Source: Dendrobates tinctorius (lineage: Eukaryota). From it: 64,000 bases of DNA. The position numbers and the translations under genes are program-made. The stretch's first letter is position 1; each line of letters starts with the position of its first letter. Location of the stretch: contig NW_027361697.1 of the NCBI RefSeq assembly GCF_039654945.1, forward strand, positions 10,912,001 to 10,976,000, in the 5' to 3' direction. The notes under the pieces are model-generated. The model ran no database searches. It was given only the letters and a program-made list of their open reading frames with translations, and had not been told where the DNA came from. This document shows positions 11,560 to 62,546 of this stretch, in pieces.

Positions 11560-11893
11560 GATGACAGCTTTGATCCTAAAGTTTATTTCCTCTATCGTTG
11601 CGTCCACATTTACTGTTTTGTAAGTACAAAAATTCAGACCTTTTAACCCAAACCAGCTACAGATTCCACGAGTATTTATCCGAAGGCTTTTAAATATTAA
11701 AAATAAAACACACACACACAATACATTAGTTTGCAGGAGATTTATCTGGTAATCACTCCAGGGGTATAACAGTGAGGAAGGATTAGGTAAGGTTATATTT
11801 TTTTTTATATTTTTTTATGCTGAAAGGTCATCAAAAGATATTCGTTGATTTGAAAGTGAAGATTTTCTTTGCATCCTTCATTGATTCTGATGC
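11560..11893 (-). other. Probable terminal 3'UTR exon of the ranaspumin-like gene, with polyA signal
   Basis: ctttttcttaacattacag| acceptor at 11894; AATAAA on minus strand at 11587-11582; 3' end approximate. Confidence 0.6.
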
Positions 11894-13025
11894 CTGTAAT
11901 GTTAAGAAAAAGATATATAACGTTTTATTATGAATATTATTTATCATATCTAAATAAACAAAAGAAAAACAGCAGAAAACCAATGTGGTTGAATTAAAGT
12001 TGTAACTGTATAGTAAGTGAAAAAAGGGCTTAAAATACTAAAGCAAGAAAGCAGTGGTGAGGTAATAAAAGAAACAAAAAAAAGTGTAAAAGACAAGAAA
12101 ATTCAACGTGAAATGGAGAGATAAGAAATATATTTTAGCTACATAAATAATAAAAATAATAAAAAAAAATAGAAAGTCTTAGTAAACCTCTTGGAAAAAA
12201 ATTTGTGGATGATAAAGGAGGATGAAAAAAAAAGTTTATCGCTTTTCACACTGAAAAATCCGATGACAAAAAAAATTATTAGTGATCCTCTGGGCTGAAG
12301 AGGACCTATTTGGCCAGTTTTTGTTCTTATTTCAATTTTCCTGTCCTGAATATATCCTTGGTTTGATAATATCTGCCAAATATTTTTTTTTTAATGATAG
12401 AGGCCTTTTTATTTAAAGCTCAGTTTTATCGTCTTGACAAGGGGGTGTGGCCGACAGGATCCTCTAGGGTGTGACTTTAGGCTGCTCTGCATTATTACCC
12501 CATGAGCAAAGGGGAGGGGGAATATCATAAAAGTTAGCACAAAATAAAAAGCTTATTTACATCTCTGGAACCGTATGGTGGATTTAATAGAAAACAACAA
12601 AGAAATATTTAGAGGAGTAGTAGGTATAAGAAGAAAGGAAAATACTGGCCACTTTTGTACTCCCTGAAAGGTCCTCGTTATATGTCACCCGTTCCAGTTA
12701 GAGAGACCCATTATTGGAGGGTACTCGTAATTCTAAAAATATCTCATTTCATAAAGTCATGTCAGAAGTTGAGCTTAGGGTAAGAATGTGGAGGCTATGA
12801 CCCCCCGACGCTTCCCTGATAAAGTTGTATGTTGGTCATAGACATTATAATACTTGCACTCAACTTTCTAAAGACGGTGGAATAAAGCTGAAAGTGTCTA
12901 AAAAGGCGCCTTTTTAGCAATTGCTGAAAGACTTAGCATTGAGACCCCTTTCAAACCCAACTAGTAATACGCCTTGTTCTCATGACAAAAAGACTTATTT
13001 TCATTTGATGCTTTATAATACTTAC

Positions 13026-13089
13026 ATTTCTTTTTTTTTTTAATTTTCTTTTAACCGGCTCAAAGATTGGCCACACTCAGTACATTGTC
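13026..13089 (-). CDS. Ranaspumin-like exon 15 (DNVLSVANL*, TGA at 13062-13060, then 34 nt of UTR)
   Basis: ttttccctttccgaacag| ... AAT|gtaagt. Confidence 0.78.
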
Positions 13090-16020
13090 CTGTTCGGAAA
13101 GGGAAAAAATATATATATTTCAATAAGATTTATGTGAAAGATGGAAAGAAAATGACATAAATTAGCTTCACTGTATCCAACACTAATTCCAAAATATTTT
13201 TTAGCAACGATATTGTATGACAGTTCTTTTATCCATTTTATTTCTTATACCGTGTTCATTTCTATATCTAGTGTTGCATTTGGATTACAAATTAAAAACT
13301 TCCCCCAGTGTCGCTGATAGAGCACTTCCATACATACAGTCCATCATTTCGAAGCTAAGACAAAGGACCACTGAGTGGCCAATTAGCGGCAGCTTACAGG
13401 ACACTTGTCTAAATTAGCAGTTTAATTGCCACATAGAACTTTTAAAGGTTTTGGCATCAAAACTTTAATCGTACATGAAGACGGAAAGTAACTCTATTTA
13501 CACATGGAACTGAGAGAGTGACAAAATTAAATGCGTTGTATGCATTTTCAAAGCAAGTACAGGCTCTTCGACCCGATACAACACTGATAGAATGAGATGA
13601 GATAAAATCTAATAGAAACAAAATGAGCATATCCCAGTTGTAAGTAAACGGTAATAGTACACATAAATAACATGGGGTACTTAGTAAGCACTGTTTTTGA
13701 TAGAAAAAAAGTGTAAAAGCCATCCCACCACGACAAGGTGAACCCAATCGGGAAGGTCCTATCCTTTAGTGTTAAAACCTCACCTTGTATCAAGTAGCCT
13801 CAATGTAGATAGGGGCAGAGGAGGGTTGAGGTCCGACTGTTCAGGCATCCAGCCATTGGAAGTTATATAAATTAAATGCCTACCTAAAAAAAAAAAGGAC
13901 CACACCCCTGTTTGGAGCATCACAATTTGGGTTCACCTTGACGCGGTTGGATGGCTTTTATGCTTTTTTTAATCAAATCTATGTTTACCAAGGACCTTAT
14001 GATATTTATATACTATTACTATTATATAATATTACTATTTACTTACCGCAGGGTATTTGTCCATTTTGCTTCTATCCTAGGCTTTGCCTGTTAAATGGCC
14101 ACAGTGTGAACGTGCTCTAATACAATGCATGGATACTAACTTATGGTCCGGTTCATTTCTTTACTTTTACTGACAGGACTGAAGAGGAGGACCATTCCTC
14201 TACTAGCTTAGCATGTGTTATTTCAAATGATTTTCTATAGAAGACAACTTCTCTCAAATCCAACGTTATATATAACAGAATGATTAAATTATTTGAACAT
14301 GAAATCTAAATGATAAAAAGTAGCAGGAATTCTTAATCTCACCACAGTACAGATAATGTCATTGCCGAAGTGATTAGAAAGTTCATTCTGTAAAAAAGAA
14401 AAGAAAAAGTATCGTTTTAATCGTATTGAGCAAACGAACCATCTAAAAAGTCTGAAACCTAAATTTCATGTAGCTGTATTCCCAATATCACATCTGAAAT
14501 CTCCCGTAGTTCTGCAAATAGAGAATCTGAAAAAATGGTTGATTTCAATTTTTTTTTTAAATGGATGTATTCATCATTATTAGGATCTCATGTAACCTGT
14601 CATTAATAATGCTTGGCATTCACATTCAAAAAGAAATACTTTTAAATGACACTAAGGCCTTGTTCATATGTCCAATTTTTGTGTACGAGTGCCATCTGTG
14701 GTTTTATATGTCCGTGATTTTTCACGGACCGAGCGGTGTGTGAAAAATCAAGGAGACATGCCTGAATTTGATTCGATCAAAATCGATGATGCAAGTCTAA
14801 GGGTTTGTGAAAAAATCGGCCACACTCAGATATCTAACTTCCAAGTGCAGTATGATTTTTTTGGACTGGTGTAAAGGTAGAGAAACTTATTTCTTTTATC
14901 CTCGTATGTGAAAAAACGGAGGATTCTTGGACCACACTCTTTTCAAACATTGATCAAAATTATTGGTCCAATTTTCCTGTACATGAGAAAATCGGATGTT
15001 TGAACGAGGCCTAAGACTAAGGCTTATTTCATATATCTGACATTCATGGTCTAAGAACGGACCACAATGTCCAGACCGGCTTACCAGGCCTTCTAACCTG
15101 CACTCAACAGTCTCATATATGCCTAAGATCGGGAATGTCGAATGTGTGAAACTGACCCAAGATGAAACGTAGATAAGGAATGTTGATATTAATTACCAGA
15201 ATTGAATCAATGACAAAAGATAAAATTTTGTTGACAGATTTCACGGTTTCTTCAGGAAGTATTTTCTGAAAAATATTTTGGGATACAAGTCATTTCTTCA
15301 AGAAGGTTAAGAAACATGTTCATATATACTGTATACATATATAAAAAAAATCAGAACAATTATGGCGATGTCAAGCACAGGATTTTCTGCATCATCCTGA
15401 AATAAACGTTTTTCTCAAGCATTTATCTCTTGCCATTTTCCTCTATCAAAAAGGCCGTGCTTTACTTTCTGTGTCTTCTATTGTACACATAAGGGGTGGA
15501 CATATCATTGGTGCAACCCGTGTAGCTGCACTGGGGCTCTAAAGGTAAGGGGGCCCATTTCAACTACCAAAGCAAGTGGAATTGTGCATGATGTTGAACT
15601 GTTGGATGTCAAGCGGCCCATCCTGTTCTGTCCGTGTCCACTAGTGGTACACATAACAAGAGAACGGCTTGCGCAAAAGTGAAAAATGTCAATAGATGAC
15701 GTGGGATGTACACGGCGGGATGCTCAATAAAGCATTCATTTTCATGCAATAGAAGTCAGAATATGATCAAGAAAAGGACAAGAAGGGAGAGATCTCTGGG
15801 ACTTTTATGTATTTTCTTTGTTTAGTTTTCTTGACCGCCAGCAGTCATTGACAGTTAGCGCTAAAGTAAGAAAGTAACTCATGGTACTGAAGACTAAGTT
15901 CACTTACAATTTTTAAGGGGCTGTTGATATATATACTGCTCAAAAAAATAAAGGGCACACAAACAGCCTGTTGCAAATGGAATAGTGTTCCCTTTATTTT
16001 TTGAGCAGAATAAATATATA

Positions 16021-16058
<38 letters not shown>

Positions 16059-19000
16059 CTATGGCTTCTTACCAAATCTTTTATAAGTTCAGCAATGCTA
16101 CATTGTAATTTACCCTGAAACACAAAGCAAAGATGTTAGTACATTCTACATTTAGGCAAGATGATGATTGGTGAGATTAAACAGTATACATATACCCATC
16201 ACTTCAGGAAAGCTCACAGCCTGAAATAATCATTCCGCCGACTCACCACCACCCGAGCTGCTGCCTCACCACCACCCGAGCTGCCGCCTTACCACCACCC
16301 GGAGCTGCCGCCTCACCACCACCAGAGCTGCCACCTCATCACCACCAGAGCTGCCGCCTCACCACCTTCCGAGCTGCCAGCCCACCACCACCAGAGCTGC
16401 TGCCTCACCACCATCAGAGTTGACACCTCACCACCACCAGAGCTGCCGCCTCACCACCACCCGGAGCTGCCGCCTCACCACCACCCGGAGCTGCCGCCTC
16501 ACCACCACCAGAGCTGCCGCCGCATCACCACCAGAGCTGCCGCCTCACCACCACTGGGAGCTGCCGCCTCACCACCACCAGAGCTGCCGCCTCACCACCT
16601 TCCGAGTTGCCGCCTCACCACCACGAGAGCTGCCGCCTCACCACCACGAGAGCTGCCGCCTCACCACCACGAGAGCTGCTGCCTCACCACCACCCGAGCT
16701 GCTGCCTCACCACCACCCGAGCTGCCACCTCACCACCACCAAAGCTGCTGCACTCCCGACCTTCTGTCTCTTCCCCATTATCCCGTAGAACGTAAGTCCG
16801 CAAGGACAGGGTCATCTCCCTTCTGTACCAGTCTGTCGTTGTAAATTTGTTTACTGTAAGCGATATCTATAACTTTGTATGTAACCCCCCTTCTCATGTA
16901 CAGCACAATGGAATTAATGGCGCTATATAAATAAATAATAATACATAGAAACTAAATTAGCTACTGACATGGCATGTTAAATATATGTATATACCTGTAA
17001 AGGAATATCATTATATCATAATTGCTATATATCATATGTATAAAATGTGTATTGTATCTATACTGTGTTTATCATATGTGTGTATATATATCTGTATATA
17101 GATATACACATATATATACTGTATGAACCTCAATACTAAAACTGCATAGATGTATGTATGTGAACCCAAAGCTATTGTATATACCTATAATGTATATATA
17201 TGTATAATATGTATATCTTATGCTTTTCATGTGCTTATGTAAATATATATGTATTTATGAACCCAATACTAAAACGTGATAGATGTTTGTATTTCAGTCT
17301 TACCAAGAGTTTTTTCATTTTCAAATCAATGTTTTGTGAGTCTCCAGGCTATAAAAAAAAAAATATGAATGTTATTAAGACTTTTCATTAAGACAGTGAT
17401 TTCATTCCAATTACTATTTGTTTTCTAATTGATCTTCTCGGATAGTGATGGTTTGCGTGATCTGCCCAGTGGTTCTGATGTGAATTGTGGTCAGCCAAAG
17501 ATTTTGCTAGAATATTCTTGTTAACCGAATTGAAGAAAAGGTAATAGAGGACTCATCTGTTGGTCACTTGTGCTAAACCTTTTCAGCCCCGAGTGACCTA
17601 GAATGGCGATGTGTCATTTACATTACTGGTCTAAGGAATTCGACAAAAGAAGGAACACATTTTATTAATTACCTGACACTTCCAATGAGTTAATATGTCT
17701 TTTAGAGTCTGAAACAAACAAATGCAAAATATTAGTCACTTAGCCTCAAAGTCTGCACTGTATTTTAGCAGGTATATGCTTCACACGAGCTTTACAGTTG
17801 TGTTCTATAACATTAAGGCTCCAATTCCTACCATGAGATTTTGCCGCTTTTTTTGACGCCATTTATTTTTGCTGCACCAGAAACGCAGCGTCTCCCAGTT
17901 CCAGCAAAGTGGATGGGATTTATAAAAATCTCCTGGCCACTGTGCTTCTATTTTGCTCAGCATAAACTGATCGGCGATGTGTTTTTCTAATCTAAAGCAA
18001 GTCAATTTCTCTTGCAGGTGCCCTGAGTTTTCTGTGCAGATTTCCCCCATAGACTTGCACTAGATGCAGAAAATCCACAGGTATAAAACGCACATGCATT
18101 TTTAGTGCTTTTACGCAATGGAAACTAAAAAAAAAGCATGTAATCCGCACCTAAGTACTGTATATCAATAAAGTTTTGTCAAAGCCAAAAAAAAACCCCA
18201 AACAGTATCAAAAACACAGCAGCTCTATTTAAAGCGTAATGCATAAAAAAGACAAAAAGTGCACCATCAAAAGAGCATTAAAAATGAATGTTCAAGAAAA
18301 AGCACACAAAAACGCAATAAAAAAAATGCAAGTAACATAATTTAAATAATATGTGCAGAAATTCTGCAGCATCAAAAACTCACAAAAATCTCATAGTAGG
18401 AATTTAAATAATATGTGCAGAAATTTTGCAGCATCAAAAACTCACAAAAATATCATAGTAGGAACATATCCTAACAAGCAGGCAAAATCAGGAATGGGTG
18501 AAAAATGCAGGAGTTGTGACATGTTTCTATTATACTTTTCCTCTGATTTTTTCACTCCTGGTGGTAATTTTTTTCTCTTCATATCACGATCTTAATATTT
18601 AAAAAAGAAAAAAAAATTAATCTTGCAAATGTTACAATGGCCACTGGGGCTTTTTCAGACACATACTTCCTTGTCCCTTTAAGAAGAGTTTCCATCAGGC
18701 TCCTTACCATCAGAGACAGGACTAGAATGACAGGTAACTCCTGTGTACACAGCTGATAACGCAGGATTCACCAGTCATAATAGGGGATGTCACAGCAGAC
18801 CCTGCTTCCCATCCCTTCACAATGACCTTTGCACATGCTCATCGCACACTTCAATGCAAAAGATAAGGGAGGGATCTCTCCATTAAGGGTACATATATGT
18901 GCTGTTTCCTGAGACTATGGAAAGTCTGAGTCTAAAAAAGATCCCAGCGGTCAATATATGAACTGCAAGATTTTATTTTGTTTTTGTTTTTATTGTAGAT

Positions 19001-22000
19001 TGTGAAATATAAAAAAAATGCCATTTTTTTACTAATAAATTTAAAACAAAAATATGATTTAAACAATTGGTCACTTTCAGGTGATAGCTTCCCTTAAAGG
19101 AAAGAAAGCAAAAATGGAGATAACTCAGCATACACCCAGTTCTAAGACCTATTTAAAGGTTCCAAATTCTGTCATCCTGTGTCAATGCGAAGACTCGCTC
19201 CAATGCATGTGGATAGAGTAGTTAATGGGGAATCGAGAAGGTCCCAGCACTCACGCGTTTCAGCCCTTCCAACGATATCATCAACAGTCATTGGGCTGAA
19301 ACGCGTCCAGTTTTGTTGAATAAAGGAACCAAGAAAAAAAAACCTATGTGATAGCCGGGACCTTCTTGATTCCACAGTGGGAATTTAAGCCTTTTAGGTT
19401 TTTTTTTACAGTACGCTGTAATACTTGGTATTGTAGTGTACTGTGCTGTCAGCAAACGTCTATTTAGCCTTGATCGTGGCAGAACTCATTAAGGGTATAA
19501 CATTATGGCTCTTGGTTGTCTTCACTAAGCCTTTCAGATACCATGAGAGTCCATTTGCACCCCACATTAGCATCAAGGGACCTGATGGAGTGATGGAATG
19601 GGGCTTGATTTTCGGTGTAACCATTTAGATGCCAACGTTGCTAATAAAGGTTTCAATACCACGATCATCTCAGTCCTTCTCCGCACAAAACAGTTTGGAC
19701 ATTTTTACATTATGTTGCATGAAAGGGTGTGATCATTATAACAACAGGTTGAAATGCTTGTAGGAATAATGAAAGAACACAAGAGTTATTATATACCGTA
19801 CTTTCCTTTTTCCCTGCATGAATAGTGTTAGCACATAGTGATTGTATTGCTGCTTTCAGTCTTGTTTTCTTGACCACTCGAGTGCAGAAACTTTTGAAAC
19901 GTTTGGCTATGCTAAGACTTATTACATTAAATGGAAAATTATAAAAGATGACATTCTATTTGCAAATATTCACCTTGCCAGAGACCTGAAAGAACAGAAG
20001 AAAAGGCAGATAAGTTTGCATCGTTAACAGCTTTTAAGAAAGGGCTGGATGATTTTCTCAATGCACATAACATTGCGGGTTATAGCTAATTTGGTGACAA
20101 AATGCACAGTTGGTGGAGAAAGGTTGACCTTGAAGGGCCGCGATCTTTTTTCAACCTATGTAACCTTATACATTTGTGTAAATTCACATTAACACTTGAT
20201 TTAAGAATGACACCTTTCATTGATCCCACAAGACCTATAATCATTGTCTTTTAAATCATGTTTCTACTTCATTAGTAGGAAATATAAGAAATAGTGTATC
20301 AGACCAACGAAAAAAAAAAAACCAGCATGCACAAGATGCATCGGATCGGATCACACTCAGCCATTCATGTGCATGGATCCGAGGAAAAAAATGGACTGCA
20401 CTCAGATGACAAACCGAGTGCGGTCTGATTTTCACAGACTAACAGAATAGAGAATATAAAGAATTTCTTTTCCTTCTCCACATCCAAAAACATTGGACCG
20501 GAGTTGGATCAGAGTGTGATTAGCATAACAGGATTGATTTTTTCAGATGAGAGAAAAACGGTCGTGTGACCCTAGCCTATCCGAAAGTGCAGCTTCCTGG
20601 AAAAAAAAAAAAAGAATTTATTTTCTCCTGGGAGCCACCTGCTTTCAGTCATGAGGTTCATCGCTCACAGCACTGCTGATTATACAGTGAGCTGAGGCTG
20701 TAAGCACACCCTGGTTCCTTAACTGACAGCTTGCTCTGCCCAAATGTGCTGCACCGTGAGCTGTCAATCAAAATGCCAGGACATTCTTACAGCCGCCAGT
20801 GACAGTAAAATGAATGGTGAGCGACGACTGTAGCCGCTTATACGTGCCCCTATGACTGAAAGCCAGCGGCTCCTGGGACGAAATAAGTTTATTTCCTCCC
20901 AGTAGTCGCGCTTTCATTAAGGCGGCTAGGGAGCATTGTAACGATAATTGCCTAACGATTAACCCTATATCTGCAGGAAAATAGAGTTTTCCGTGGGGAT
21001 AGGTTCCCTTTAAGTTATGTCTTAAAAGGGTTGTCTAGTCAATAATAATGTTGTGTAATGACTAGGACATTGGGTACAACATGGTCAGATGTACATCGAA
21101 TCAGTAATGTGGATCGTGCTCATTTGCAGTAAATTATAATTCCATAATAAAATTCAGAGTATTACAGTAAATGTCCTTCTTACCTGGATGAGCTCATGCA
21201 GACATTTTGCTCTCCAAACTGGATCTAACTGTAAAGAAAAAAAAAAGAAAATACATATGGGGACATCATCAAGGAATGAGCGACTATGTTTGAAGTTATA
21301 TTTACTTGAAAGATTGCTTGATAGACTCATTTCCGATAGATTTCCTTGGACTCTCAGCTATGTTTGACCAGGATATAATAGAAGAAATATGTCTGATATA
21401 TAACATTGGAGCAACGTAGACTAGAGTACTCCTGTCTGTCTCCTAAGGGGTAGTAGCAGAATTGTGAGCTTATCTGCATCGTGTGAATTATCGGCCATGT
21501 CATGTCTGGATTTGCTGACGCCACAGCGGGACATGGGGAGCGCTGAGTGCCTGTCCACAATTACTGCATACAGACACATTGACTGGAATTATGGTGGTGT
21601 GAATTAGCCCCGCTAGTGGTTAGCGAGGGCATTTAGTCAGATTTTTATGCTGTCCTGCTTTCTTAACTGCAAAAAAAAAAATCCACTCTAAGAAACAAGT
21701 TCTGTAGGAAAAAATATGGAAATATACTACATAGTTCAATATTCTTAATAGCAAGAGCTATTTATTTTACATTTTAGGAAAAGCGAGCTCATTATTAGTA
21801 ATGTAACAATGATAGAGCTTCCTCATTTAAAACTTCTTGGCCAATGAAGAATTTGGGAGTAACTTGTATTTTATCAAATGGATTTCCACTTTCAAGTTCA
21901 TCCTTTTAATGACCAGCGCTGCGTAAAAATAAAGTATCAGCAGGACATGGGAACGACGTGGTAAGGGGAGGCTGACATGACTCAGGGAGGGCGGGACGAC

Positions 22001-28000: not shown

Positions 28001-31000
28001 ATAAATAAGAAGAAAACTGAATTGCTAACATTTCAATCAAAAACACTATTGAAAAGTAGGATTGTTAGCGACATTTACAAACTTTCTGCTCTTGGCATTA
28101 AACCAATCAATCATGAATAATAAGAGTAGCTCAACACAATTAGTACTGGAGTGAACCTAGAAGGTCATCATTGGAGCTCTCAATGTGGTCATCTGAGATG
28201 TCTCCCAGGCGGCATTTTGCCGTTCCCCGGCAGTGGGATTTGGCCATTTCGAGCTGGTGTTAGATTGAAAGCTCGCTCATAAAACATGTAAAAGGCCAAC
28301 TCCCTGAATTCAATCGCACTCACATCTTTCAGAGGCAAGTACAGTCGAAGCTCTGATCACTTCCGGGGTCAATGCAATGTCAGCCGAGTGATGAGGTTAC
28401 CTGATCACATTGCTGTTGTCACTGCTGCGTTACAGAGGAGTAGAAGATGGCCATAAGTTAAGCGTTCCAATGAAGCATGAGAAATGGTAGTTTTTTTTGG
28501 GGGGGACAGTCTGGGGGATGGTGAGTGTGAGGGGGTATAGTATTGAGACTAAGCAATGTGGGAGAGGACAATATAGAATGGGAGAGAGTGAAGGACAGTG
28601 TAAGGGGACAATATGGGGGGAAGTTGTGAGAAAGGGGCATAGTATAGCGACTGGATATTATGAAGGGACAAGATTACAGACAGTGTAAAAAGGCATCAGC
28701 GTGGGAGAATAGTATGAGGGCACAGTATGGAGTAGAAAGTATTTAAATCAGTTAAAATTTAAGAGACGGGACACAATATAGAGTCTGGACACAGTATGGG
28801 ACGCAGTATAGAGAGGGGGCAGCATGGGTGGGCAGTGTGAGAGCAAAGTATGGAGGGGAGAAAATGTAGAAAGGGGGTGAGTGTGAGGCAGGGTCACACT
28901 ATAGAGACTTGGCAGTATGGGACGACAGTATGAGGCACAGTACAAAGAGGGAGCAACAAAGAGGGACTGTATGCTGGCACAGTATATGGGATAGTTTGCA
29001 GAGGGGAAAGTGTGAGTAGTGGGTACAATATAGAGACTAGGCTGTATGGGGGGTACACAGTATGACGGGACAGTGTGAAAATGGTCCTCAGTTTGGGGAA
29101 GAAAACTCAAGATAGGGATAGTGTAGTTGTTATAGCTAGCAAAGGCAGACAGTGTCGTGGATATAGCTAATAAGGGCAAACAGTCTGGCAGTTATAGCTA
29201 ATTAGGGTGGACAGTGTGGTGGTTATAGCTAATTAGGTTGGACAGTGTGTAGTGGTAGTTATAATTCATAAGGCGGATGGTATGCAGGCAATATTTTATT
29301 GGACAGGAGAGTGTGGAGGCCATGTTCAATAAGTGTGACAGTGTGAGGAACACATTTTGTGCAGGAGGCATAGTGAGAGGCAATTACTTATTCAGGGGCA
29401 CAGCGTATGGCAAATATTTTTATGCAGTAGCATTATAATCACGCTGTTATTTTTAAGGGCAACAAGTCGGTGTTTGCTACAGAAGACCAGAGAAGATGTA
29501 AGGTTTCAGAGAAGTGCTTTGGATATAAAAAGTCATCATGGTGTCTAGACAAGATGTAGAAGAAAATAAAAAGAACAACTTCAATCAGAAGAGACATCAT
29601 CTATACAGTAACTGGATGTAAATGTTAATTTGTGATGCTGACTACATCTCATTAGTACTGTGGTTCCTGTAGGGTCCACCATCTGATAATGACTGTTAAC
29701 AACTCCCAGTATCTCTTTACCATTATTTAGAACATACTGGGATTATTAGTTTCATGTGATACAATTGTATATGGGACTGAATTGACATTGCAATTGATCA
29801 TTGTACTAAGCTTGGCGATGTGTTCATGTACTGATGGTGGATCTGGTGACGTATTCATGTACTGACAGTGATTCTGGTGCTATTTTCATATACTTACGGT
29901 AGCTTTATTGCTGTGTTCATGAACTGATGATGGTCCTAGTGATGTATTTATGTACTGATGGTGTTTCTAGTGATGTATTACTGAACTGATTATGGTTGTG
30001 ATGCTGTATTTCTGTACTGATGGTGGTTCTGATGCTGCATTCCTGTACTGATATTTGTTCTGATTCTGTACTTGTGCAACAAATCATAACTTGTCAGATA
30101 ACGTGATACATGGATTTGTTAATAAAGTATTGAGCCGTCTGACAAATTAAGGATTACTACATCTGTATTTATGTTAAGTGAGTAAGTATGCAAATTATAT
30201 ATATACTTACATCAGTCATTGCTTGAGATAAAACACATTGACTATTTGGACTGGCTAGGGATTTGTTGACTTTTGACTTCTGATTGCATGTTAGAAATAT
30301 GGCTAGGGCTATGTTCACATATTGTGTTTTTGATGCATTTATTTCAGCAGGCAAAACCTGCTCTCTTGGCAGTAAGCAAAAAAAGCAGGTTTTGATTAGT
30401 TTCTGTTGTGTTTTTTGCTGCATTTTTGTGCGCTCTTTTCCTGCGTTTTTGGCATGGTACATTTGTCTCTTGTGCGTGCTGATAAAATTTAGGGTATAAA
30501 AAAATATCTGATTCTACCTCATAAGGTTTTGGCACCAAAAATGCAACAGAAACTGATGAAACCTGCGTTTTTTCAGCATTTCTTCAGCAGTTTTTGCACC
30601 ACCATTGCTTTCAATGGGTCATATACGTTATGCTGAAAAAACGCTGAAAGAAGTGACATGCTCCATGCTGCAAAACCCAAGGGTTTGCATAAAATACTGA
30701 GGACAGAAAAGCAAGCTGTGTGCATTACATTGCTGAAATCTCATAGACTTTGCTGGTCCTTGAAAACGCAGCTGAAAATTTGCAGAAATAAAAAACGCTC
30801 CAAAAATCAGTTAAATAAACGCATCATGCGAACATGGCCTAAGTCAAGTTTTCTGATCCAGCTATAAGGTAATTTAATATAGTACTGCACTTATATTAAC
30901 TGCGTAAATAATTATGATGTTGCACATTTTCGTATTTATCTACTGTAGGCTATAGTGTTTTAGAACATTTAAAAACAAATCTTACCAAAAATGTAATGGT

Positions 31001-34000
31001 GGTTTCGACTGATTTGGTCACTTTATCCAGTTCAGACTAGTACCATAAGAATAAGAAGTAACTTATCGTTAGACTGTTATTATTTCAGTTATTAACATGT
31101 ATTATAATAGTTGCATTTCTGTTGTCCGTGCTCTTCTTATTTTATATTGCATGATCAACACAATTGTGTATTTTATTATTGGTCCAATTTAATATTCACA
31201 CATAGTAATTTGAAGTAGATACAATAAACTATTATCAAAACATTTAGTAAAATAATGCTTATATCCTGAATGCTGTCCTCTCTGAAGACACAGAATGAGG
31301 AACTAGTGAGCACGCAATGGATGAGGCTCTCATCTTCTGGATGTACCCTCCCACTATGGTATGAATGCCACTGCTGTGGTCATAAAGATGGCAACCTCGC
31401 CTGGAGATTTATTGTGAGTACCTCCTTTCTCAGGGCCAGTACAAGCAATTTATCTGCTTAACTTTTAATGTAAATCAGAGGTTCACATGCTTCAGATGAG
31501 GTCCGCTATGCCATTCCGTGCAGCCCCCAACCATCTGGTTACAGAAATGCTTGGCCTGCGTGCAACTATTTTTGCACGTAGATTCCATGAAAAAAAGGGT
31601 TAGTAGTAGTGATGAGCGAGAATACTCGTTTCTCGGGTTTTCCCGAGCATGCTCGGGTGGTCACCGAGTAGTTTGGCTTGCTCAGAGATTTAGATTTCGT
31701 CGTCTCAGCTGCATAATTTGCGACTGTTGGACAGGCTGAATACATGTGAGGAATGCCTGTTTGTTAGGGAATTTCCACATGTATTCAGCTTGTCTACAAG
31801 TCGCAAATCATGCAGATGAGACGACGAAAACTAAATCTCCGAGCACGCCAAAATACTCGGAGACCACTTGAGCATGCTCGGGAAAACACGAGAAACGAGT
31901 ATACTCGCTCATCACTAGTTAGTAGTCATTTATGTAATATAAATTTTAGGAGTATGGGGGTCCCTTGGCCTTTTTGTTACTCCAAGAAGATGTATATGAG
32001 TTCTACATCTGGCCATCTATACTTGTAGCTCTCCATCTTGTAGTTTATGGCATTTACGTTTACAATGGGGAGAGTCACGTTCACACATGGCCTTCCCCTC
32101 TCCAAAGAGCTGGCTGGTTTTCAGATTCCTAGCTGTCAGCCAATTAATTTTGATTTGCCGGAAATGTCTCCGATGGAAAGACACTTATAGGTTATATTTT
32201 GGCCCTTCGAAGCGATTCAACGTGACATTGTGACCCTCGGATCAGAAACGGTTGTACATCCTGGCTGTAATATTTTATCCAGACTGTAGAATTATGTCTA
32301 GAGGTAGACTATAATATTAAAGCATTTATCGATGGTGCTATGTATTACTAAGTTTCACACTTATTTAGTGATGATCATTCGTTATTTATGTGGTTCATAA
32401 ATCTAATTTAGACTAGATTTGACTGGCGTTTGTGATTACGATATGAGTGAGGTTTATTAGAAACCTATTACTGTGAAACCTTTCCCTCTTTGAATATAGA
32501 CAAAAAAAAAGACTTGAGTCGGATAATGTATATTTTTAGGGAAAATTTTGAAATTGATTTGATATATAACTTTTTAATGATTGAAATAAAGAGTATGTTT
32601 TAAATGATTTCATTGAAGATACAGCACTTAAATCGGTGATTTGACAAAAACTGAATTCTGCAAATTTGCTTAAATTCAGCCAAGAAATTCAATTCACATT
32701 GTAAAAAGAGAAAAAAAATGTATTATGCTGTGAGGTCTCCCAACCTCAGAGCATAATAAGCAGATAAAAAGCAATACCATAGCATACATAGCCCGTTACC
32801 TGTCCCTGCCACCGCAGCTCCTCACCCGTCCTCCACTAGCTTCTAAAGGCACCTGATCCACTTCATCACCAGTCTCCTCTTCATCGGTCATGATGCCATT
32901 TCATGTGTTGTCTGATGCATTCACGTGAGGCAGTGAATGTCATGATATCACAACATGCATTTAAGCCTACCTGGTGTAAAAAACTATGGCAAAGAGTGAA
33001 TCTGAGACCGGCACTGGAGATGATGGGTGTCTTAAGAAGCCATGAAGCCATTGGAGGACTGGCGAGGAGCTGCGGTGACCAGAACAGCTGAGGGGCTTAC
33101 TGAGCATATTTATTGCTTTAAACCCCTTCCAAGCCCATATAAACTCAGCAAACTGGCAGCTGGCTGGCCATCATTTTGCTGGGTTTGTACAAATTGACCT
33201 CCCAAATCTTCAGATTCACTCAAATTTGAGGAAATTTGAATCAAATTCGATTTGGAGTGACTCATGAAAATGTTTGAAACGAAAATATCAGCCTATCAAA
33301 ACTCAGCATTGATTTTGTACTCTGCTTTTAAAAAATGTAAGCTGCGTTGTGATTGGTTGGTACGGGCAGCAGAACACAGATCATCATGATGCCATTGAAA
33401 CACAGTAAAAGGTCTTGTGTGAATCTAACATTATAATAGAAAGTGACCGAAAATTTACATGGACAGCAACCAATTTATGGATGTCACCCACACACGGTGT
33501 CAGACTGGGGTACCAAGGGTCCACCAGTAACCAACTCCAGGGCCCCACTTTTCAGCTTCATGCAAATGTGACATTATCCTCAATCACAAATTTATATAAC
33601 AATAAACTGGGTATATTGTTAAATGAATAAGATGCTGCCTCAGTCTGTACATAGTGATGCAAGTATGTTGTGCCAAGTACTGATCACCCACTCTTGCACA
33701 GCGGCCCACCGGAGGATTTTCCTGTTCTCCTGTGGGCCAGTCTGAGCCTCCCCACACAAATGGGTCCTTGTCCACCTGGGACTTCCATTAGCAGTAGAGC
33801 TTTGCAATTACAGATTAATCCACAAAGTATAGTAGATTATTATATTATATTGTAATTACTGTATCATCATATTTAACAACACATGTAGTGTGAAATAAAG
33901 TGAATTACCTCTTCATGCCTACTCTTGCAGACATTTCCAGCAAGTGAAGTAAGCAACTCATCTGATTTCTATTAAAATACAAAATGATAAAAGATTAATA

Positions 34001-36019
34001 TAATACAGTTAAATATTACAGTATGTAGTATATATAATAATGTAAAATTGGTACATATTTGGAGATTATTGAATGTTATGCCTAGAAGAAAAGAACAAGC
34101 TTTAACATTAGGGACATTTTTTTAAACTTAAATGCTGCATATATTTTGGGCTAAAAATTAATATTCCAGTTGGGTTTCTTTAAAAAAAAATTTCACACGT
34201 TGTGTTTTTTTATGCTTTTTTCCACAGGCAAAAGCTGCTCTCTTGGCAGAAAGAAACTTGGGTCAAAAAGCAGGTTTTGCTTAGTTTTTGTTGCATTTAT
34301 TCCTACATTTGTCTCTTGTGCATGCTGATAAAGTTTAGTGCATAAAAAAATCTGTTTCTACTTCATCAGGTTTTAGCAATAAAAACGCAGCAAAAATTGA
34401 TGCCTAAGTTTTTTTAGCGGTTTTTTTGCACCACCATTGCTTTCAATGGGTGAAATATGGTGAAAAAACACTGAAAGAAGCGACATGCTCCATTCTGCAA
34501 AACCCAAGGCTTTGCACAAAATACTGAGGACAAAAAAAAAACAAGCTGTGTGTATGAGATTTCTGAAATCTCATAGACTATGCTGGTACTGTAAAACGCA
34601 GGTGAAAATTTGCATGGAAGAAATGCTGAAAAAAACGCAACGTGTCAACATAGCCTTATAGCCTCAATTTCACTATTTAAAGTTGAGTTAAAAGAAAAAA
34701 TACCTCGAGTGAGCTCAGACATTTTTTTATGTCTAAACCTAATTTGTCCATGTCTAAATCAATGCCGTATCCTGAAAGGAAAAAAAAGAACAATTAAAAA
34801 AATATTTATTACAAGACCTAATAAATATAGCAAGCAAAATAATATCACAGCTTGTTACATTCATAACTTTCACGTTTCTGCTTTCAAACTATTATATGAC
34901 GCTTGCTCCCTTGAACAAATAGTTGTTTGTAAATATAATATTTTGCTGGTACATTGTTAACTAGATAATATTAGGTGTTAGATAGTAGTTTATGAAAATT
35001 GTACTATTGTTCTAATAAAAATCAGCTCTCCATTCTACTTGGCCCAATGCTACCAAAAACAAATGGTAGTGGGAGCTCTATTGGAAATTTTGCCCAAGCT
35101 TTAAGTTACATCACTGTCCGTTAGGTTTGTGGTGGTCTTGTTATTTTACTATCTGCATAAACAAAGCTGCAGTGTAAAGTATGGACTATTGGCAGAACAG
35201 CGGCCTATAATTAAGCAGAGGCTGGCACAGGGGCGGACATATCATTGGTGCAACCTGTGCACAGGGGTCCACGAAGTAAGGGGGCCCATTTCTGCCTCCC
35301 AAACAGGTAAAATTTTGTATTATGAGGAGCTATTGGACTGCGAAGGGCCCATATATCATTCAGCACAGGGGCCCTCTTCTGCATTTGCCAGTGGGCTGGC
35401 AACATTGTTCAGGGCTATGTGCTAATGTATAAGACCTAAAAATCAGCCAAGCAGCCAACAATGATGTCAATAAATAGAAGGTAGCTAGAAACCAGCATAT
35501 AACTTTCCAGACCGCAAATGGATATAAGAAATCACCAGTTTTTGCTCTTATATTTTTCCTGCTGCTTCCCTGACGAGTCTGTTTTTTATTTATTTTTTTT
35601 TAAATATGCTCAGTGATATGGGCATTTTTATCTAATGCTAATTTTAATGGTCTTTGCCAAAGGAGCATAGCTCACAGGGTAATAAGGCAGAGTAGCCTAA
35701 AGACACACCCCTGAGGATCCCGTAAGCCATGCTCTCTTGGTAAAGACCATAAAACTTAGCACAAACTAAAAAGAACTATATATCTAGAGTTAAAAAAAAA
35801 TGTACTCAGGGGTACAAAGGGAATAAAAAAGAACAAAATATGATCCCATTGTCCACTGTGATTTTAAGTGTAAAGACATTAATTTAGCTCCTTAATATAT
35901 TAATGTAATGTATAACATGTATAATATATCAATAAGTGGCTTACAGTAAATCTATCAGATATCTTACCACTGCTGAAGAGGCCGAGACCAACCAGCAAAA
36001 AGATGGCAATGTTCTTCAT
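13060..36019 (-). CDS. Lv-ranaspumin (Lv-RSN-1)-like secreted 8-Cys helical protein, 235 aa, 15 coding exons: join(complement 36019-35968,34771-34704,33968-33909,31036-30986,27990-27946,25696-25643,23685-23632,21228-21184,19985-19974,17708-17673,17348-17304,16114-16073,15265-15197,14387-14343,13089-13060)
   Basis: Manually spliced; all introns GT-AG with pyrimidine tracts; 708 nt open frame: MKNIAIFLLVGLGLFSSGYGIDLDMDKLGLDIKKCLSSLEKSDELLTSLAGNVCKSRHEESELDKVTKSVETTITFLDDHKCLPEPLRGLEIAEMAKEKLDELKELLKRIVSDEIAVLEPAMDKVCEMLDPVWRAKCLHELIQVSGKTLKDILTHWKCQPGDSQNIDLKMKKLLGKLQCSIAELIKDLKILPEETVKSVNKILSFVIDSILNELSNHFGNDIICTVDNVLSVANL*. Signal peptide, 8 Cys, VC-x9-KCL and ILSF motifs match my recollection of Lv-RSN-1. 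The gene model is more certain than the family call. Confidence 0.85.
14343..14387 (-). CDS. Ranaspumin-like exon 14 (NELSNHFGNDIICTV)
   Basis: ttttcttttcttttttacag| ... GTG|gtgaga; 45 nt; supplies the eighth Cys. Confidence 0.85.
15197..15265 (-). CDS. Ranaspumin-like exon 13 (KILPEETVKSVNKILSFVIDSIL)
   Basis: atatttttcag| ... CTG|gtaatt; 69 nt. Confidence 0.8.
15934..16008. mobile_element. Tiny (~75 bp) Tc1 deletion derivative consisting of TIR ends only
   Basis: ctgctcaaaaaaataaaggg ... ccctttattttttgagcag; same termini as the Tc1 at 39354-40446. Confidence 0.7.
16073..16114 (-). CDS. Ranaspumin-like exon 12 (GKLQCSIAELIKDL)
   Basis: ttgctttgtgtttcag| ... TTG|gtaaga; 42 nt. Confidence 0.85.
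16244..16750. repeat. 21-22-bp GC-rich minisatellite (gagctgccgcctcaccaccacc), followed by an L2-like 3' tail to ~16942
   Basis: About 23 tandem units; tail tgtacagcacaatggaattaatggcgctatataaataaataata. Confidence 0.8.
17304..17348 (-). CDS. Ranaspumin-like exon 11 (PGDSQNIDLKMKKLL)
   Basis: poly-T tract then atag| ... TTG|gtaaga; 45 nt. Confidence 0.85.
17673..17708 (-). CDS. Ranaspumin-like exon 10 (TLKDILTHWKCQ)
   Basis: tttgtttgtttcag| ... CAG|gtaatt; 36 nt. Confidence 0.85.
19974..19985 (-). CDS. Ranaspumin-like exon 9, 12-nt micro-exon (VSGK)
   Basis: ccttttcttctgttctttcag|GTCTCTGGCAAG|gtgaat. Confidence 0.7.
21184..21228 (-). CDS. Ranaspumin-like exon 8 (LDPVWRAKCLHELIQ)
   Basis: ttttctttacag| ... 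CAG|gtaaga; 45 nt. Confidence 0.88.
23632..23685 (-). CDS. Ranaspumin-like exon 7 (VSDEIAVLEPAMDKVCEM)
   Basis: tttctatacctctag| ... ATG|gtaagt; 54 nt. Confidence 0.88.
25643..25696 (-). CDS. Ranaspumin-like exon 6 (AEMAKEKLDELKELLKRI)
   Basis: poly-T tract then ag| ... ATC|gtaagt; 54 nt; amphipathic helix pattern. Confidence 0.88.
27946..27990 (-). CDS. Ranaspumin-like exon 5 (DDHKCLPEPLRGLEI)
   Basis: ttatttatcattttacag| ... ATA|gtaagt; 45 nt; supplies the third Cys. Confidence 0.82.
30304..30842. mobile_element. Harbinger-type MITE; relatives at ~34190-34658 and ~17813-18473
   Basis: tagggctatgttcaca ... gaacatggcctaa termini; shared ctgaaatctcatagact...aaaacgcag blocks. Confidence 0.65.
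30986..31036 (-). CDS. Ranaspumin-like exon 4 (SELDKVTKSVETTITFL)
   Basis: ttcttattcttatggtactag| ... TTG|gtaaga; 51 nt. Confidence 0.82.
31607..31917. mobile_element. hAT-type MITE with 8-bp TSD GTTAGTAG
   Basis: TIR tagtgatgagcgag / ctcgctcatcacta; identical 8-mers at 31599-31606 and 31918-31925. Confidence 0.88.
33909..33968 (-). CDS. Ranaspumin-like exon 3 (KSDELLTSLAGNVCKSRHEE)
   Basis: ttttgtattttaatag| ... GAG|gtaatt; 60 nt. Confidence 0.85.
34704..34771 (-). CDS. Ranaspumin-like exon 2 (GYGIDLDMDKLGLDIKKCLSSLE), phase 1 to 0
   Basis: T-rich tract ending cctttcag| acceptor, GAG|gtattt donor; phase fits exon 1. Confidence 0.88.
35968..36019 (-). CDS. Ranaspumin-like exon 1 (signal peptide MKNIAIFLLVGLGLFSS-G), ends phase 1
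   Basis: acaATGAAG start, hydrophobic core, donor GTG|gtaaga; TATA box about 60 bp upstream. Confidence 0.9.
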
Positions 36020-36048
36020 TGTGCAGATTGGAGAGTTCACTTCAAGCT

Positions 36049-36082
36049 ACTGATGACTACCGGGCGCTGCACCTCATTTATA
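36049..36082 (-). promoter_or_regulatory. TATA box plus Inr of the ranaspumin-like gene
   Basis: TATAAA at 36082-36077; TCAGT Inr-like motif with A at 36051, 31 nt downstream; ATG at 36019. Confidence 0.75.
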
Positions 36083-37974: not shown

Positions 37975-39243
37975 TGGGATGAGAAATATATTTTTTTCTA
38001 ATCATAACCCCTTTTACAGTAATATACAACTATATGCTCGTTATATAGATGACCTGATCTTAATTTGGAAAGGTGATAAATCAGGAATTAAGGATTTCAT
38101 CAGTTATATTAATGGGAATGACTTCAACCTTTCATTCACATTTACTGTATCAGAACTGTCTATCAATTGTTTGGATGTGATTTTGTAAATTGCAACAGCA
38201 ATAAGGTTCAGGTTTATCCTTTTGGAAAGCCCACTGATACCAATTCAATTTTACAAGCCCGTTCATGCCACCCTAAACATGTTGTTCAAAGTATACCAGT
38301 AGGAGAATTAATAATGCTTAAAAGAAATTGCAATTCACCTACAACTTTCACTAAAGAGGCAAATCAGGCTGTATCTAGACTTAAAGATCGAGGATATGCT
38401 AACTGGATGTTGTTCAAAAGCGGAGAACTTTGTTAGCAAAATTGATAGAAATACCCTTTTGAATGAATCCCCCTCTATTTTTACATATAGTGGTGTCACT
38501 GCAAATAAAAGAAGAAAAAAAGGAGACATTTTAAAAGGTCTGAGAGTAATAATCATTATGGCTCTATTGTTAGTTTTTCTACTACATTCAGCCCGCAATA
38601 TAAAAAAATCATTGACATTGTAAAAACATTTGTGCCTATTTTATATAATGATAATACATTGGGTCAAAGTTTAAAAACACTCAGATTAGATATACTGCCA
38701 GAAAGGCTCATTCTGTGAGTGATATTTTGTCTCCGAGTTTTTTCTCTAGTAATAATAAAACAAAATAATACTTGGCTGTCATATTAGGGCTTTTACAAAT
38801 GCGGACATAATCCCTGTAAAGTCTGCAACTTTGCAACTAAGACTAGCAGATTTGTTTCTTGCACCACGGGTATATCATATCCTATTCAATCCCATATGAA
38901 CTGCAGTTCAGAGGGTGTTATATATCTAATAGAGTGCGTCTCTTGCAACCTCCAGTATGTGGGCTGCACAATAGGTTCCCTTCAGAGAAGAGTTAGGAAA
39001 CATTTGTGGGAAGCCACTAGCCAGAATTATAATATTTCAGCAGTTTTGAGCCATTGTAAAATAAAACATGCGGGTAATACTAACAGTCTCAAAGTTGTAG
39101 CGATAGAGAAAGTTTCCAAACCTGCTAGGGGAGGTGATTTTAGGAGAAAATTGCTAAACCGTGAATCCTTCTGGATTTTCAAATTAAACACACGAATACA
39201 GCTAGGTCTGAAGAGGCTTGATCTTATTTTACAATTAGATTGA
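37975..39243 (+). mobile_element. Degraded Penelope-like retroelement (RT C-terminus plus GIY-YIG endonuclease)
   Basis: YARYIDDLILIW, KPTDTNSILQARSCHP, NCSSEGVIYLIECVSCNLQYVG...LLNRESFWIFKLNT; frameshifts and stops. Confidence 0.88.
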
Positions 39244-39353
39244 ATCTGTCTCAAATATACGCTCTATTTTTGTGGCATTTTTTGTTAGTCCTAATTAATT
39301 CTGGTTGTTCCATTGAAAAAATGTTTTCTCTTTCCAACTTCAGCATGTGTATA

Positions 39354-62485: not shown

Positions 62486-62546
62486 TTTTGGTAGAAATGT
62501 AGACAAAATCAAACAAACTATATAGTAATGTAAAACAAGGTACAAG

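What the first reader, a model, noticed from the sequence alone, without database searches (positions are those of the whole stretch)
11560..36082. Hidden intact ranaspumin (foam-nest surfactant)-like gene built from 15 tiny exons
Seen: TATA/Inr, a signal-peptide exon and 14 further short GT-AG exons splice into an uninterrupted 235-aa ORF with 8 Cys (C35, C54, C82, C126, C137, C158, C179, C224). The CDS is about 3% of the span and the ORF track misses it. Knowledge: Lv-RSN-1 of Leptodactylus vastus is a ~217-aa helical surfactant with four disulfides. Inference: Cys spacing, VC-x9-KCL, LKD and ILSF match it from memory at low identity, so this is a divergent family member. If the host does not build foam nests, it points to a wider skin, oviduct or egg-jelly role for the family.
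Basis: partly seen in the sequence, partly recalled or inferred. Interest (0 to 1): 0.85.

Follow-up and report, generated by a model that had tools for sequence, protein, structure and literature searches.

The report
Ranaspumin-like gene of 15 mini-exons
A poison-frog-like genome carries an intact gene, split into 15 very short exons, for a secreted protein that is a distant relative of Lv-RSN-1, the foam-nest surfactant of Leptodactylus vastus, which suggests this family is not limited to foam nesting.

Summary
On the minus strand there is a TATAAA box, an ATG and a signal-peptide exon. Fourteen further GT-AG exons of 12-69 nt follow.

The spliced protein has no reference, so I did not send it to the remote search or folding tools. 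Single exons found nothing. Instead I had the PDB tool confirm short stretches of Lv-RSN-1 (4K82_A) and compared the two proteins locally.

- Both mature proteins are 217 aa and have 8 Cys.
- Cys gaps are 19,28,44,11,21,21,45 against 20,29,47,11,21,22,39. Random Cys placement matched this well in 2 of 2,000,000 trials.
- A free global alignment gives 28% identity and beat all 10,000 shuffles.
- At database scale the match is invisible (phmmer E about 40).

So this is most likely a divergent member of the Lv-RSN-1 family. The fold was not tested.

Transposon proteins point to a dendrobatid host, a group that does not build foam nests. Papers already report "ranaspumin" transcripts in dendrobatid male glands. 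The hydrophobic N-terminal tail of Lv-RSN-1 is acidic here, so surfactant function is unproven.

The parts
36077..36082 (-). TATAAA box, 63 nt upstream of the ATG. An Inr-like TCA lies 29-32 nt downstream of it, which implies a 5'UTR of about 30 nt.
   Evidence: Read directly.
35968..36019 (-). Exon 1 (52 nt coding): MKNIAIFLLVGLGLFSS plus the first base of G18. This is the signal peptide, with predicted cleavage SSG|YG. It ends in phase 1; donor gtaaga.
   Evidence: Donor in the top 2.8% of GTs.
34704..34771 (-). Exon 2 (68 nt): (G)YGIDLDMDKLGLDIKKCLSSLE, carrying Cys35.
   Evidence: Acceptor in the top 0.1%.
33909..33968 (-). Exon 3 (60 nt): KSDELLTSLAGNVCKSRHEE, carrying Cys54.
   Evidence: One of 4 candidates in a 6.7-kb gap. 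Dropping it lowers the global score against Lv-RSN-1 from 40 to 10.
30986..31036 (-). Exon 4 (51 nt): SELDKVTKSVETTITFL. This is the weakest exon of the model (acceptor at the 24th percentile).
   Evidence: It is kept because the Cys54-Cys82 gap is 28 with it and 11 without it, against 29 in Lv-RSN-1, and because it mirrors E11. The alignment score does not need it.
27946..27990 (-). Exon 5 (45 nt): DDHKCLPEPLRGLEI, carrying Cys82 at exon position 5.
25643..25696 (-). Exon 6 (54 nt): AEMAKEKLDELKELLKRI, strongly amphipathic (hydrophobic moment at 100 degrees 1.97).
23632..23685 (-). Exon 7 (54 nt): VSDEIAVLEPAMDKVCEM, carrying Cys126.
21184..21228 (-). Exon 8 (45 nt): LDPVWRAKCLHELIQ, carrying Cys137. 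Together with E7 it forms VC-x9-KCL.
   Evidence: Best splice score of the scan (17.8). 4K82_A has the same VC-x9-KCL...Q.
19974..19985 (-). Exon 9, a 12-nt micro-exon: VSGK.
   Evidence: Second-best splice score in the unbiased scan (16.2). It makes the Cys137-Cys158 gap 21, as in Lv-RSN-1.
17673..17708 (-). Exon 10 (36 nt): TLKDILTHWKCQ, carrying Cys158.
17304..17348 (-). Exon 11 (45 nt): PGDSQNIDLKMKKLL.
   Evidence: It makes the Cys158-Cys179 gap 21, against 22 in Lv-RSN-1.
16073..16114 (-). Exon 12 (42 nt): GKLQCSIAELIKDL, carrying Cys179 at exon position 5, as in E5.
15197..15265 (-). Exon 13 (69 nt): KILPEETVKSVNKILSFVIDSIL, containing the ILSF motif.
14343..14387 (-). Exon 14 (45 nt): NELSNHFGNDIICTV, carrying Cys224.
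   Evidence: Acceptor in the top 0.3%.
13026..13089 (-). Exon 15: DNVLSVANL and stop TGA at 13062-13060. ATTAAA is at 13044-13039 and a GTAAGT donor at 13025-13020. It is therefore either the last exon or is spliced on to the exon at 11893.
   Evidence: It gives 235 aa and an 11-residue tail after the last Cys, against 10 in 4K82_A.
11831..11893 (-). Either a 3'UTR exon or an alternative last coding exon (ASESMKDAKKIFTFKSTNIF-stop if joined directly to E14, giving 246 aa).
   Evidence: This variant scores lower against Lv-RSN-1 (global 32 against 40).
11582..11587 (-). AATAAA polyadenylation signal.

Best explanation
This is an intact, TATA-driven gene on the minus strand. It has 15 coding mini-exons spread over about 23-24.5 kb of transposon-rich intron.

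It encodes a 235-aa secreted precursor: an 18-aa signal peptide and a 217-aa mature protein of 24.4 kDa, pI 5.1, with 8 Cys and amphipathic-helix-like exons. The protein is a divergent homologue (about 28% identity) of Lv-RSN-1, the two-domain, four-disulfide helical surfactant protein of Leptodactylus vastus foam nests.

The gene looks like a tandem duplication of a six-exon, four-Cys module (E2-E7 and E8-E14), with all junctions in phase 0.

Shown here: the exon chain, the open reading frame, the signals, and the collinear Cys and residue match to 4K82_A.

Inferred: the same fold and disulfides, and secretion into a mucous, skin-gland or oviduct fluid. There it would act at interfaces or hold hydrophobic ligands in the helical core.

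It lacks the hydrophobic Gly/Pro-rich N-terminal tail of Lv-RSN-1 and is more hydrophilic overall, so strong foam-type surfactancy is the less certain part.
For: - Gene anatomy.
- Splice-site percentiles and strand asymmetry.
- 4K82_A segments printed by the PDB tool: 1-25, 30-67, 72-109, 110-146, 151-165, 165-207 and 196-217. Its Cys are at 18, 38, 67, 114, 125, 146, 168 and 207.
- Cys gaps are 19,28,44,11,21,21,45 in the model and 20,29,47,11,21,22,39 in Lv-RSN-1. Random placement matches as well in 2 of 2,000,000 trials, and permuting the model's own gaps in 8 of 5040.
- The gaps 11, 21, 21 come only from exons found at stringent or moderate splice thresholds in scans made before any comparison with Lv-RSN-1.
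- Global alignment: score 40, 52 of 185 identical, 7 of 8 Cys aligned, shuffle mean -29, sd 15, 0 of 10,000 reach it; the reversed-sequence control scores -12.
- Local Smith-Waterman score 68, p about 0.001.
- Cys-anchored alignment: 43 of 150 non-Cys identities, 1 of 5000 within-segment shuffles reach the score.
- Mature length is 217 aa in both proteins, with similar pI and similar Leu, Lys, Asp and Ile content.
- Intron positions relative to the Cys repeat between the two halves: C1+5 and C5+6; C2-13 and C6-14; C3-4 and C7-4; C3+10 and C7+9; C4+2 and C8+2 (coordinates).
- Lv-RSN-1 itself has a significant internal repeat, 18-106 against 125-204 (score 61, 0 of 5000 shuffles).
Against: - There is no transcript evidence.
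- No homologue was retrieved from the big protein libraries, but only single-exon pieces could be sent.
- The sequence match would not pass a database search (phmmer E 39-40 at PDB scale; hhalign local P 0.038, probability 1.4%).
- With Cys masked, the best local alignment is off-register.
- The model's own two halves are not significantly similar in sequence (p=0.25).
- Dropping E4, E5, E10 or E11 does not lower the alignment score.
- The N-terminal tail is acidic (mean hydropathy -0.34) where Lv-RSN-1 has a hydrophobic one (+0.86), and GRAVY is -0.11 against +0.35.
Confidence: 0.8

Rival explanations
1. It is a real secreted-protein gene, but it is not related to Lv-RSN-1. On this view the resemblance comes from shared composition (Leu/Lys/Asp/Glu-rich amphipathic helices with scattered Cys).
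For: phmmer E about 40 at PDB scale. hhalign probability 1.4%. With Cys masked the best alignment is off-register, p about 0.01. There are no Pfam hits for either protein's pieces.
Against: The two proteins have the same mature length, the same Cys number and the same order of Cys gaps (p about 1e-6 against random placement; 8 of 5040 against permuted own gaps). Within-segment shuffles still give z=4.0. The reversed-sequence control scores -12 against 40. VC-x9-KCL....Q followed by 15 residues to the next Cys is shared exactly.
Confidence: 0.1
2. It is an unexpressed or recently inactivated copy of a ranaspumin-like gene. The sequence is still intact but the gene has no function in this species.
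For: No transcript or protein matching the longest exon was found in the two libraries searched. Introns are loaded with repeats. E3, E4 and E13 have modest acceptors.
Against: All 28 splice sites, the ATG, the TATA box, the polyadenylation signals and a 235-codon frame spread over 15 exons are intact. The blanks mean little, because only a 23-aa exon within a 58-aa genomic reading frame could be queried.
Confidence: 0.07
3. It is a chance chain of in-frame AG..GT segments and not a gene.
For: All internal exons are phase 0 and tiny, so any in-frame segment can be added or left out freely. Some non-model candidates have comparable splice scores, for example 25412-25392.
Against: The signal peptide sits directly behind a TATA box and an ATG, and polyadenylation signals lie at the far end. 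Candidates are enriched on this strand. The collinear match to an independent protein beat all 10,000 shuffles. Intron offsets from the Cys are mirrored in the two halves.
Confidence: 0.03

Closest known systems
Lv-RSN-1 (Lv-ranaspumin), Leptodactylus vastus foam-nest surfactant, PDB 4K82/4K83
   Same: Both are secreted. Both have a 217-aa mature chain and 8 Cys with nearly the same spacing. They share VC-x9-KCL, LKD and ILSF, are acidic in pI and are Leu/Lys/Asp/Ile-rich. Identity is about 28% in a collinear alignment.
   Different: The 16-17 residues before the first Cys are acidic here and hydrophobic Gly/Pro-rich in Lv-RSN-1. Gly content is lower here and GRAVY is -0.11 against +0.35. There are indels of 3-9 residues between Cys3 and Cys4 and after Cys7. 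The host is not a foam-nester. Fold, disulfide pairing and surface activity are untested.
'Ranaspumin' transcripts in male finger glands of dendrobatid frogs (PMC12617036, citing Abondano Almeida et al. 2024)
   Same: They come from the same host family, as suggested by transposon hits. They are described as encoding a secretory extracellular protein in frogs that do not build foam nests.
   Different: The papers give no sequence in the text or supplements held. I cannot tell whether those transcripts are of the Lv-RSN-1 type or resemble one of the unrelated tungara ranaspumins.
Tungara frog ranaspumins Rsn-1 to Rsn-6 (cystatin-like surfactant Rsn-2, fucolectins, C-type lectin)
   Same: They share the name and the foam-nest context only.
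   Different: According to PMC5727673 and PMC4929970 they have no sequence or fold similarity to Lv-RSN-1, and so none is expected to this gene.
Latherin / PLUNC (BPI-fold) surfactant proteins
   Same: They are secreted vertebrate proteins with intrinsic surface activity, encoded by genes with many small exons.
   Different: They have a different fold and are not Cys-rich helical bundles. No similarity was seen.

Membership tests
Lv-RSN-1 (Lv-ranaspumin) family | Secreted protein with a mature chain of about 217 residues | tested here: met
   There is a signal peptide MKNIAIFLLVGLGLFSSG. Cleavage after G18 leaves 217 aa, and 4K82_A is 217 aa. The cleavage site is judged by the -3/-1 rule, not by a predictor.
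Lv-RSN-1 (Lv-ranaspumin) family | Eight Cys (four disulfides) in a characteristic spacing | tested here: met
   Gaps are 19,28,44,11,21,21,45 against 20,29,47,11,21,22,39. Random placements do as well in 2 of 2,000,000 trials. Disulfide pairing itself cannot be tested here.
Lv-RSN-1 (Lv-ranaspumin) family | Significant sequence similarity to Lv-RSN-1 | tested here: inconclusive
   As a single planned comparison it is significant: global z=4.5 with 0 of 10,000 shuffles reaching it; local p about 0.001; Cys-anchored 1 of 5000. It is not significant at database scale: phmmer E 39-40; hhalign P 0.038.
Lv-RSN-1 (Lv-ranaspumin) family | Two-domain, mainly alpha-helical fold (six-helix bundle plus helical sheet with two short strands; PMC4929970) | not tested
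   The spliced protein has no reference and was not typed into structure prediction. Only hydrophobic moments compatible with amphipathic helices were computed.
Lv-RSN-1 (Lv-ranaspumin) family | Internal two-fold repeat of a four-Cys module | tested here: inconclusive
   The repeat is significant in 4K82_A (score 61, 0 of 5000 shuffles). In this gene it shows only as mirrored exon lengths and intron offsets from the Cys. The sequence of the two halves is not significantly similar (p=0.25).
Lv-RSN-1 (Lv-ranaspumin) family | Very hydrophobic, unstructured N-terminus, thought to relate to surfactant function (PMC5727673) | tested here: not met
   Here the tail is YGIDLDMDKLGLDIKK (mean hydropathy -0.34). 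In 4K82_A it is LLEGFLVGGGVPGPGTA (+0.86). The length of the tail is conserved; its character is not.
Lv-RSN-1 (Lv-ranaspumin) family | Surface activity and presence in foam-nest or oviduct secretion | not testable with these tools
   This needs expression data and a surface-tension assay.

The most novel reading that the evidence does not exclude
The Lv-RSN-1 family may be an old, frog-wide family of secreted two-repeat helical proteins. Its original job would be in skin or male breeding-gland secretions, for example as a carrier for hydrophobic signals or a wetting agent. On this reading the foam-nest surfactant of Leptodactylus is a later co-option, made by replacing an acidic N-terminal tail with a hydrophobic one. 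The one-module-per-six-mini-exons gene structure would record the duplication that built the two domains.
Probability: 0.3. Interest if true: 0.6.

Novelty: new member of a known kind. Interest (0 to 1): 0.45.

Why it matters
Reviews held here describe Lv-RSN-1 as unlike the other frog foam proteins, apart from some sequence similarity to one Leptodactylus fuscus nest protein (PMC5727673).

A clear relative in a frog that does not make foam nests would have three consequences:
- It separates the family from foam nesting.
- It gives a natural contrast (acidic against hydrophobic N-terminal tail, hydrophilic against hydrophobic surface) for testing what makes the protein surface-active.
- It gives a genomic basis, including exon structure and an internal duplication, for the 'ranaspumin' transcripts seen in dendrobatid male glands.

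It is also a practical warning for annotation. The gene has 3% coding density, exons of 12-69 nt and a 12-nt micro-exon, so it is easy to miss or to mis-assemble.

Tried and rejected
**Pieces sent to the remote tools.** All of these were blank or irrelevant, as expected for pieces of 20-23 aa at about 28% identity.
- E13, E2 and E6 (plus 2 residues) against the PDB at E up to 10: no Lv-RSN-1 hit.
- Four exon pieces and one Lv-RSN-1 segment against Pfam: no family.
- The 58-aa genomic reading frame around E13 against 1.84 billion representative proteins: 0 hits.
- The same frame in the search for homologous proteins: no candidate shared three 5-residue words.

The 235-aa spliced protein has no reference. 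I therefore did not type it into the search for homologous proteins, the search of solved structures, structure prediction, the listing of cluster members or the look-up of encoding contigs.

**What I did instead.** Each came back 100% identical to 4K82_A. I stored the segments that the tool printed in /scratch over several scripts. Residues 68-71 and 147-150 remain X. All comparisons were then run locally.

**Other negative or rejected results.**
- tblastn of the model against the whole window found no paralogue.
- The 246-aa variant with the 11893 exon as the last coding exon was rejected as primary model. It gives a 22-residue tail and a lower global score.
- The primary Lv-RSN-1 paper (Hissa 2014) and 'Sexy Fingers' (Abondano Almeida 2024) are not held.
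- The supplements of PMC12617036 do not mention ranaspumin.
- The scan's earlier notes do not mention ranaspumin.

Full report
**1. What is there**

The finding's coordinates run from a polyadenylation site to a TATA box, but the gene is on the minus strand. Read on that strand, 36082-36077 is TATAAA. An Inr-like TCA follows 29-32 nt later. The ATG at 36019 opens MKNIAIFLLVGLGLFSS-G, followed by gtaaga.

- Stringent or moderate splice thresholds found E2, E5, E6, E7, E8, E9, E10, E11, E12 and E14.
- E13 was read directly from the sequence.
- Relaxed thresholds found E3, E4 and the terminal exon at 13089.

Joined together they give 708 nt and 235 aa with no stop. Cys fall at 35, 54, 82, 126, 137, 158, 179 and 224.

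All 14 introns are GT-AG. The first is phase 1, as is usual after signal-peptide exons, and all the others are phase 0. Exons are 12-69 nt and introns 324-2995 nt. The CDS is 2.9% of the span.

**2. More than chance?**

Eleven of 14 acceptors are in the top 4% of the 1453 AGs of the region, and all donors are in the top 11% of the 1347 GTs. E3, E4 and E13 have weaker acceptors, at 13-24%. Symmetric stop-free AG..GT candidates at a fixed threshold number 11 on this strand, 4 on the other strand, and 3 and 2 in the 28 kb upstream.

On its own this is only moderate evidence. The strong evidence is the agreement with an independent protein (section 4) and the gene's internal symmetry (section 5).

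**3. Limits of the tools here**

The full product was therefore never sent to the remote search, folding or look-up tools.

Single exons of 20-23 aa found nothing in the PDB, in Pfam, in the 1.84-billion representative library or in the search for homologous proteins. At about 28% identity these blanks carry no information.

**4. Test of the Lv-RSN-1 idea**

I recalled the Lv-RSN-1 sequence and used short probes of 22-43 aa to have the PDB tool confirm it. All five probes matched 4K82_A (217 aa, 'Lv-ranaspumin (Lv-RSN-1)', also 4K83) at 100%. With the extra stretches the tool printed, 209 of 217 residues are verified. Cys are at 18, 38, 67, 114, 125, 146, 168 and 207, which fits the four disulfides described in PMC4929970.

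Local comparisons with the model gave the following.
- (a) Mature length is 217 aa in both, with pI 5.1 against 4.9 and similar Leu, Lys, Asp and Ile content.
- (b) Cys gaps are 19,28,44,11,21,21,45 against 20,29,47,11,21,22,39. The summed difference is 12. Random Cys placements reach this in 2 of 2,000,000 trials, and permutations of the model's own gaps in 8 of 5040. The gaps 11, 21, 21 depend only on exons found in splice scans run before any comparison was made.
- (c) An unconstrained global alignment scores 40, with 52 of 185 residues identical (28%) and 7 of 8 Cys aligned. Shuffles average -29 (sd 15, maximum 35), and 0 of 10,000 reach the observed score. The reversed-sequence control scores -12.
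- (d) The local Smith-Waterman score is 68, with p about 0.001.
- (e) With the Cys forced into register, the seven inter-Cys segments have 43 of 150 identities and 90 of 150 positives. Shuffling within segments gives z=4.0, and 1 of 5000 shuffles reaches the score.

Against this:
- phmmer with Z set to the PDB's size gives E 39-40.
- Single-sequence hhalign gives P=0.038.
- With Cys masked, the best local alignment is off-register.

I conclude that homology is likely (about 0.8-0.85) but sits in the twilight zone. A fold comparison is still needed.

**5. Internal architecture**

4K82_A has a clear internal repeat, residues 18-106 against 125-204. It pairs C18 with C125, C38 with C146 and C67 with C168 (score 61, 0 of 5000 shuffles).

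In the frog gene the two halves are not significantly similar in sequence (p=0.25), but the exon plan repeats. The table gives lengths in aa, with the position of the Cys within the exon where there is one.

| First half | Second half |
|---|---|
| E2, 22 | E8, 15 |
| E3, 20 (Cys at 14) | E9+E10, 16 (Cys at 15) |
| E4, 17 | E11, 15 |
| E5, 15 (Cys at 5) | E12, 14 (Cys at 5) |
| E6, 18 | E13, 23 |
| E7, 18 (Cys at 16) | E14, 15 (Cys at 13) |

Intron positions measured from the nearest Cys agree within one residue: +5 and +6, -13 and -14, -4 and -4, +10 and +9, +2 and +2.

This fits a tandem duplication of a six-exon, four-Cys module. It also supports E4, E9 and E11, which the alignment score alone does not require.

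**6. The 3' end**

The exon at 13089 (DNVLSVANL-stop) is followed by ATTAAA at 13044-13039 and also by a GTAAGT donor at 13025. It either ends the transcript or splices to the exon at 11893.

The 235-aa form leaves 11 residues after the last Cys, against 10 in 4K82_A, and scores better than the 246-aa alternative.

**7. Host and context**

The flanks are transposons. They include Ty3-type RT, RNase H and integrase, a hAT element with zf-BED, a GIY-YIG ORF and Tc1-like remnants. The hAT protein's best matches are Ranitomeya variabilis and R. imitator (74%) and other dendrobatids.

Dendrobatids are not foam-nesters (my own knowledge).

PMC12617036 reports 'ranaspumin' transcripts up-regulated in male finger glands of Hyloxalus and cites the same for other dendrobatids. 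No sequence is given, so identity with this gene is unproven. A newt study also lists a 'ranaspumin' transcript. [quoted passage not shown]

**8. Function**

Shown: an intact gene for a secreted, Cys-rich protein with amphipathic, helix-like exons.

Inferred from homology: the Lv-RSN-1 fold with four disulfides.

The N-terminal tail has the same length as in Lv-RSN-1 but is acidic (five Asp, three Lys) instead of hydrophobic and Gly/Pro-rich. The protein is also more hydrophilic overall.

My best guess is a secreted component of skin, breeding-gland or oviduct fluid. It would have moderate interfacial or hydrophobic-ligand-binding activity rather than being a dedicated foam surfactant. I put about 0.3 on Lv-RSN-1-like surfactancy.

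**9. Verdict**

This is a new member of a known kind. Its value is modest but real: family membership outside foam-nesters, a mini-exon gene structure that mirrors an internal duplication, and a natural variant of the N-terminal tail.

Noticed in passing
PDB 4K82_A residues 18-106 against 125-204 (not in the window): Lv-RSN-1 itself contains a significant internal repeat that pairs C18/C125, C38/C146 and C67/C168 (local score 61, 0 of 5000 shuffles). I could not check whether the primary structure paper describes this, because it is not held.
   Followed up: partly
window 25392-25412 (-): There is an in-frame 21-nt AG..GT segment (LPAFQGV) with good splice scores between E6 and E7. If used it would lengthen the Cys82-Cys126 gap from 44 to 51, against 47 in Lv-RSN-1. 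It cannot be excluded without RNA data.
   Followed up: no
window 16237-16748: A 23-bp tandem repeat (22 copies) lies inside intron 11 of the gene. It gives the 122-aa plus-strand ORF rich in PHHH/SCRLTTTR.
   Followed up: no
window 6665-8009: A 33-bp minisatellite with 41 copies. It produces many long spurious ORFs on both strands.
   Followed up: no
window 47863-48672: Two N runs (47863-48025 and 48065-48199) are followed by an interstitial telomere-like (TAACCC)n array of about 80 units.
   Followed up: no
window 48936-55297 (-): Pieces of a Ty3/gypsy-type retrotransposon (RNase H, RT, integrase with zf-H2C2, a gag-like ORF) are interrupted by a 21/41-bp minisatellite at 49993-51211.
   Followed up: partly
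window 59162-64000: A hAT-family element (719-aa ORF plus a 394-aa ORF with zf-BED). Its closest proteins are from Ranitomeya (74%). It is followed by a 130-bp satellite (11 copies) that runs off the window end.
   Followed up: partly
window 38896-41152: A GIY-YIG ORF (Penelope-like) and Tc1/mariner-like HTH and DDE remnants lie just upstream of the gene's promoter.
   Followed up: partly
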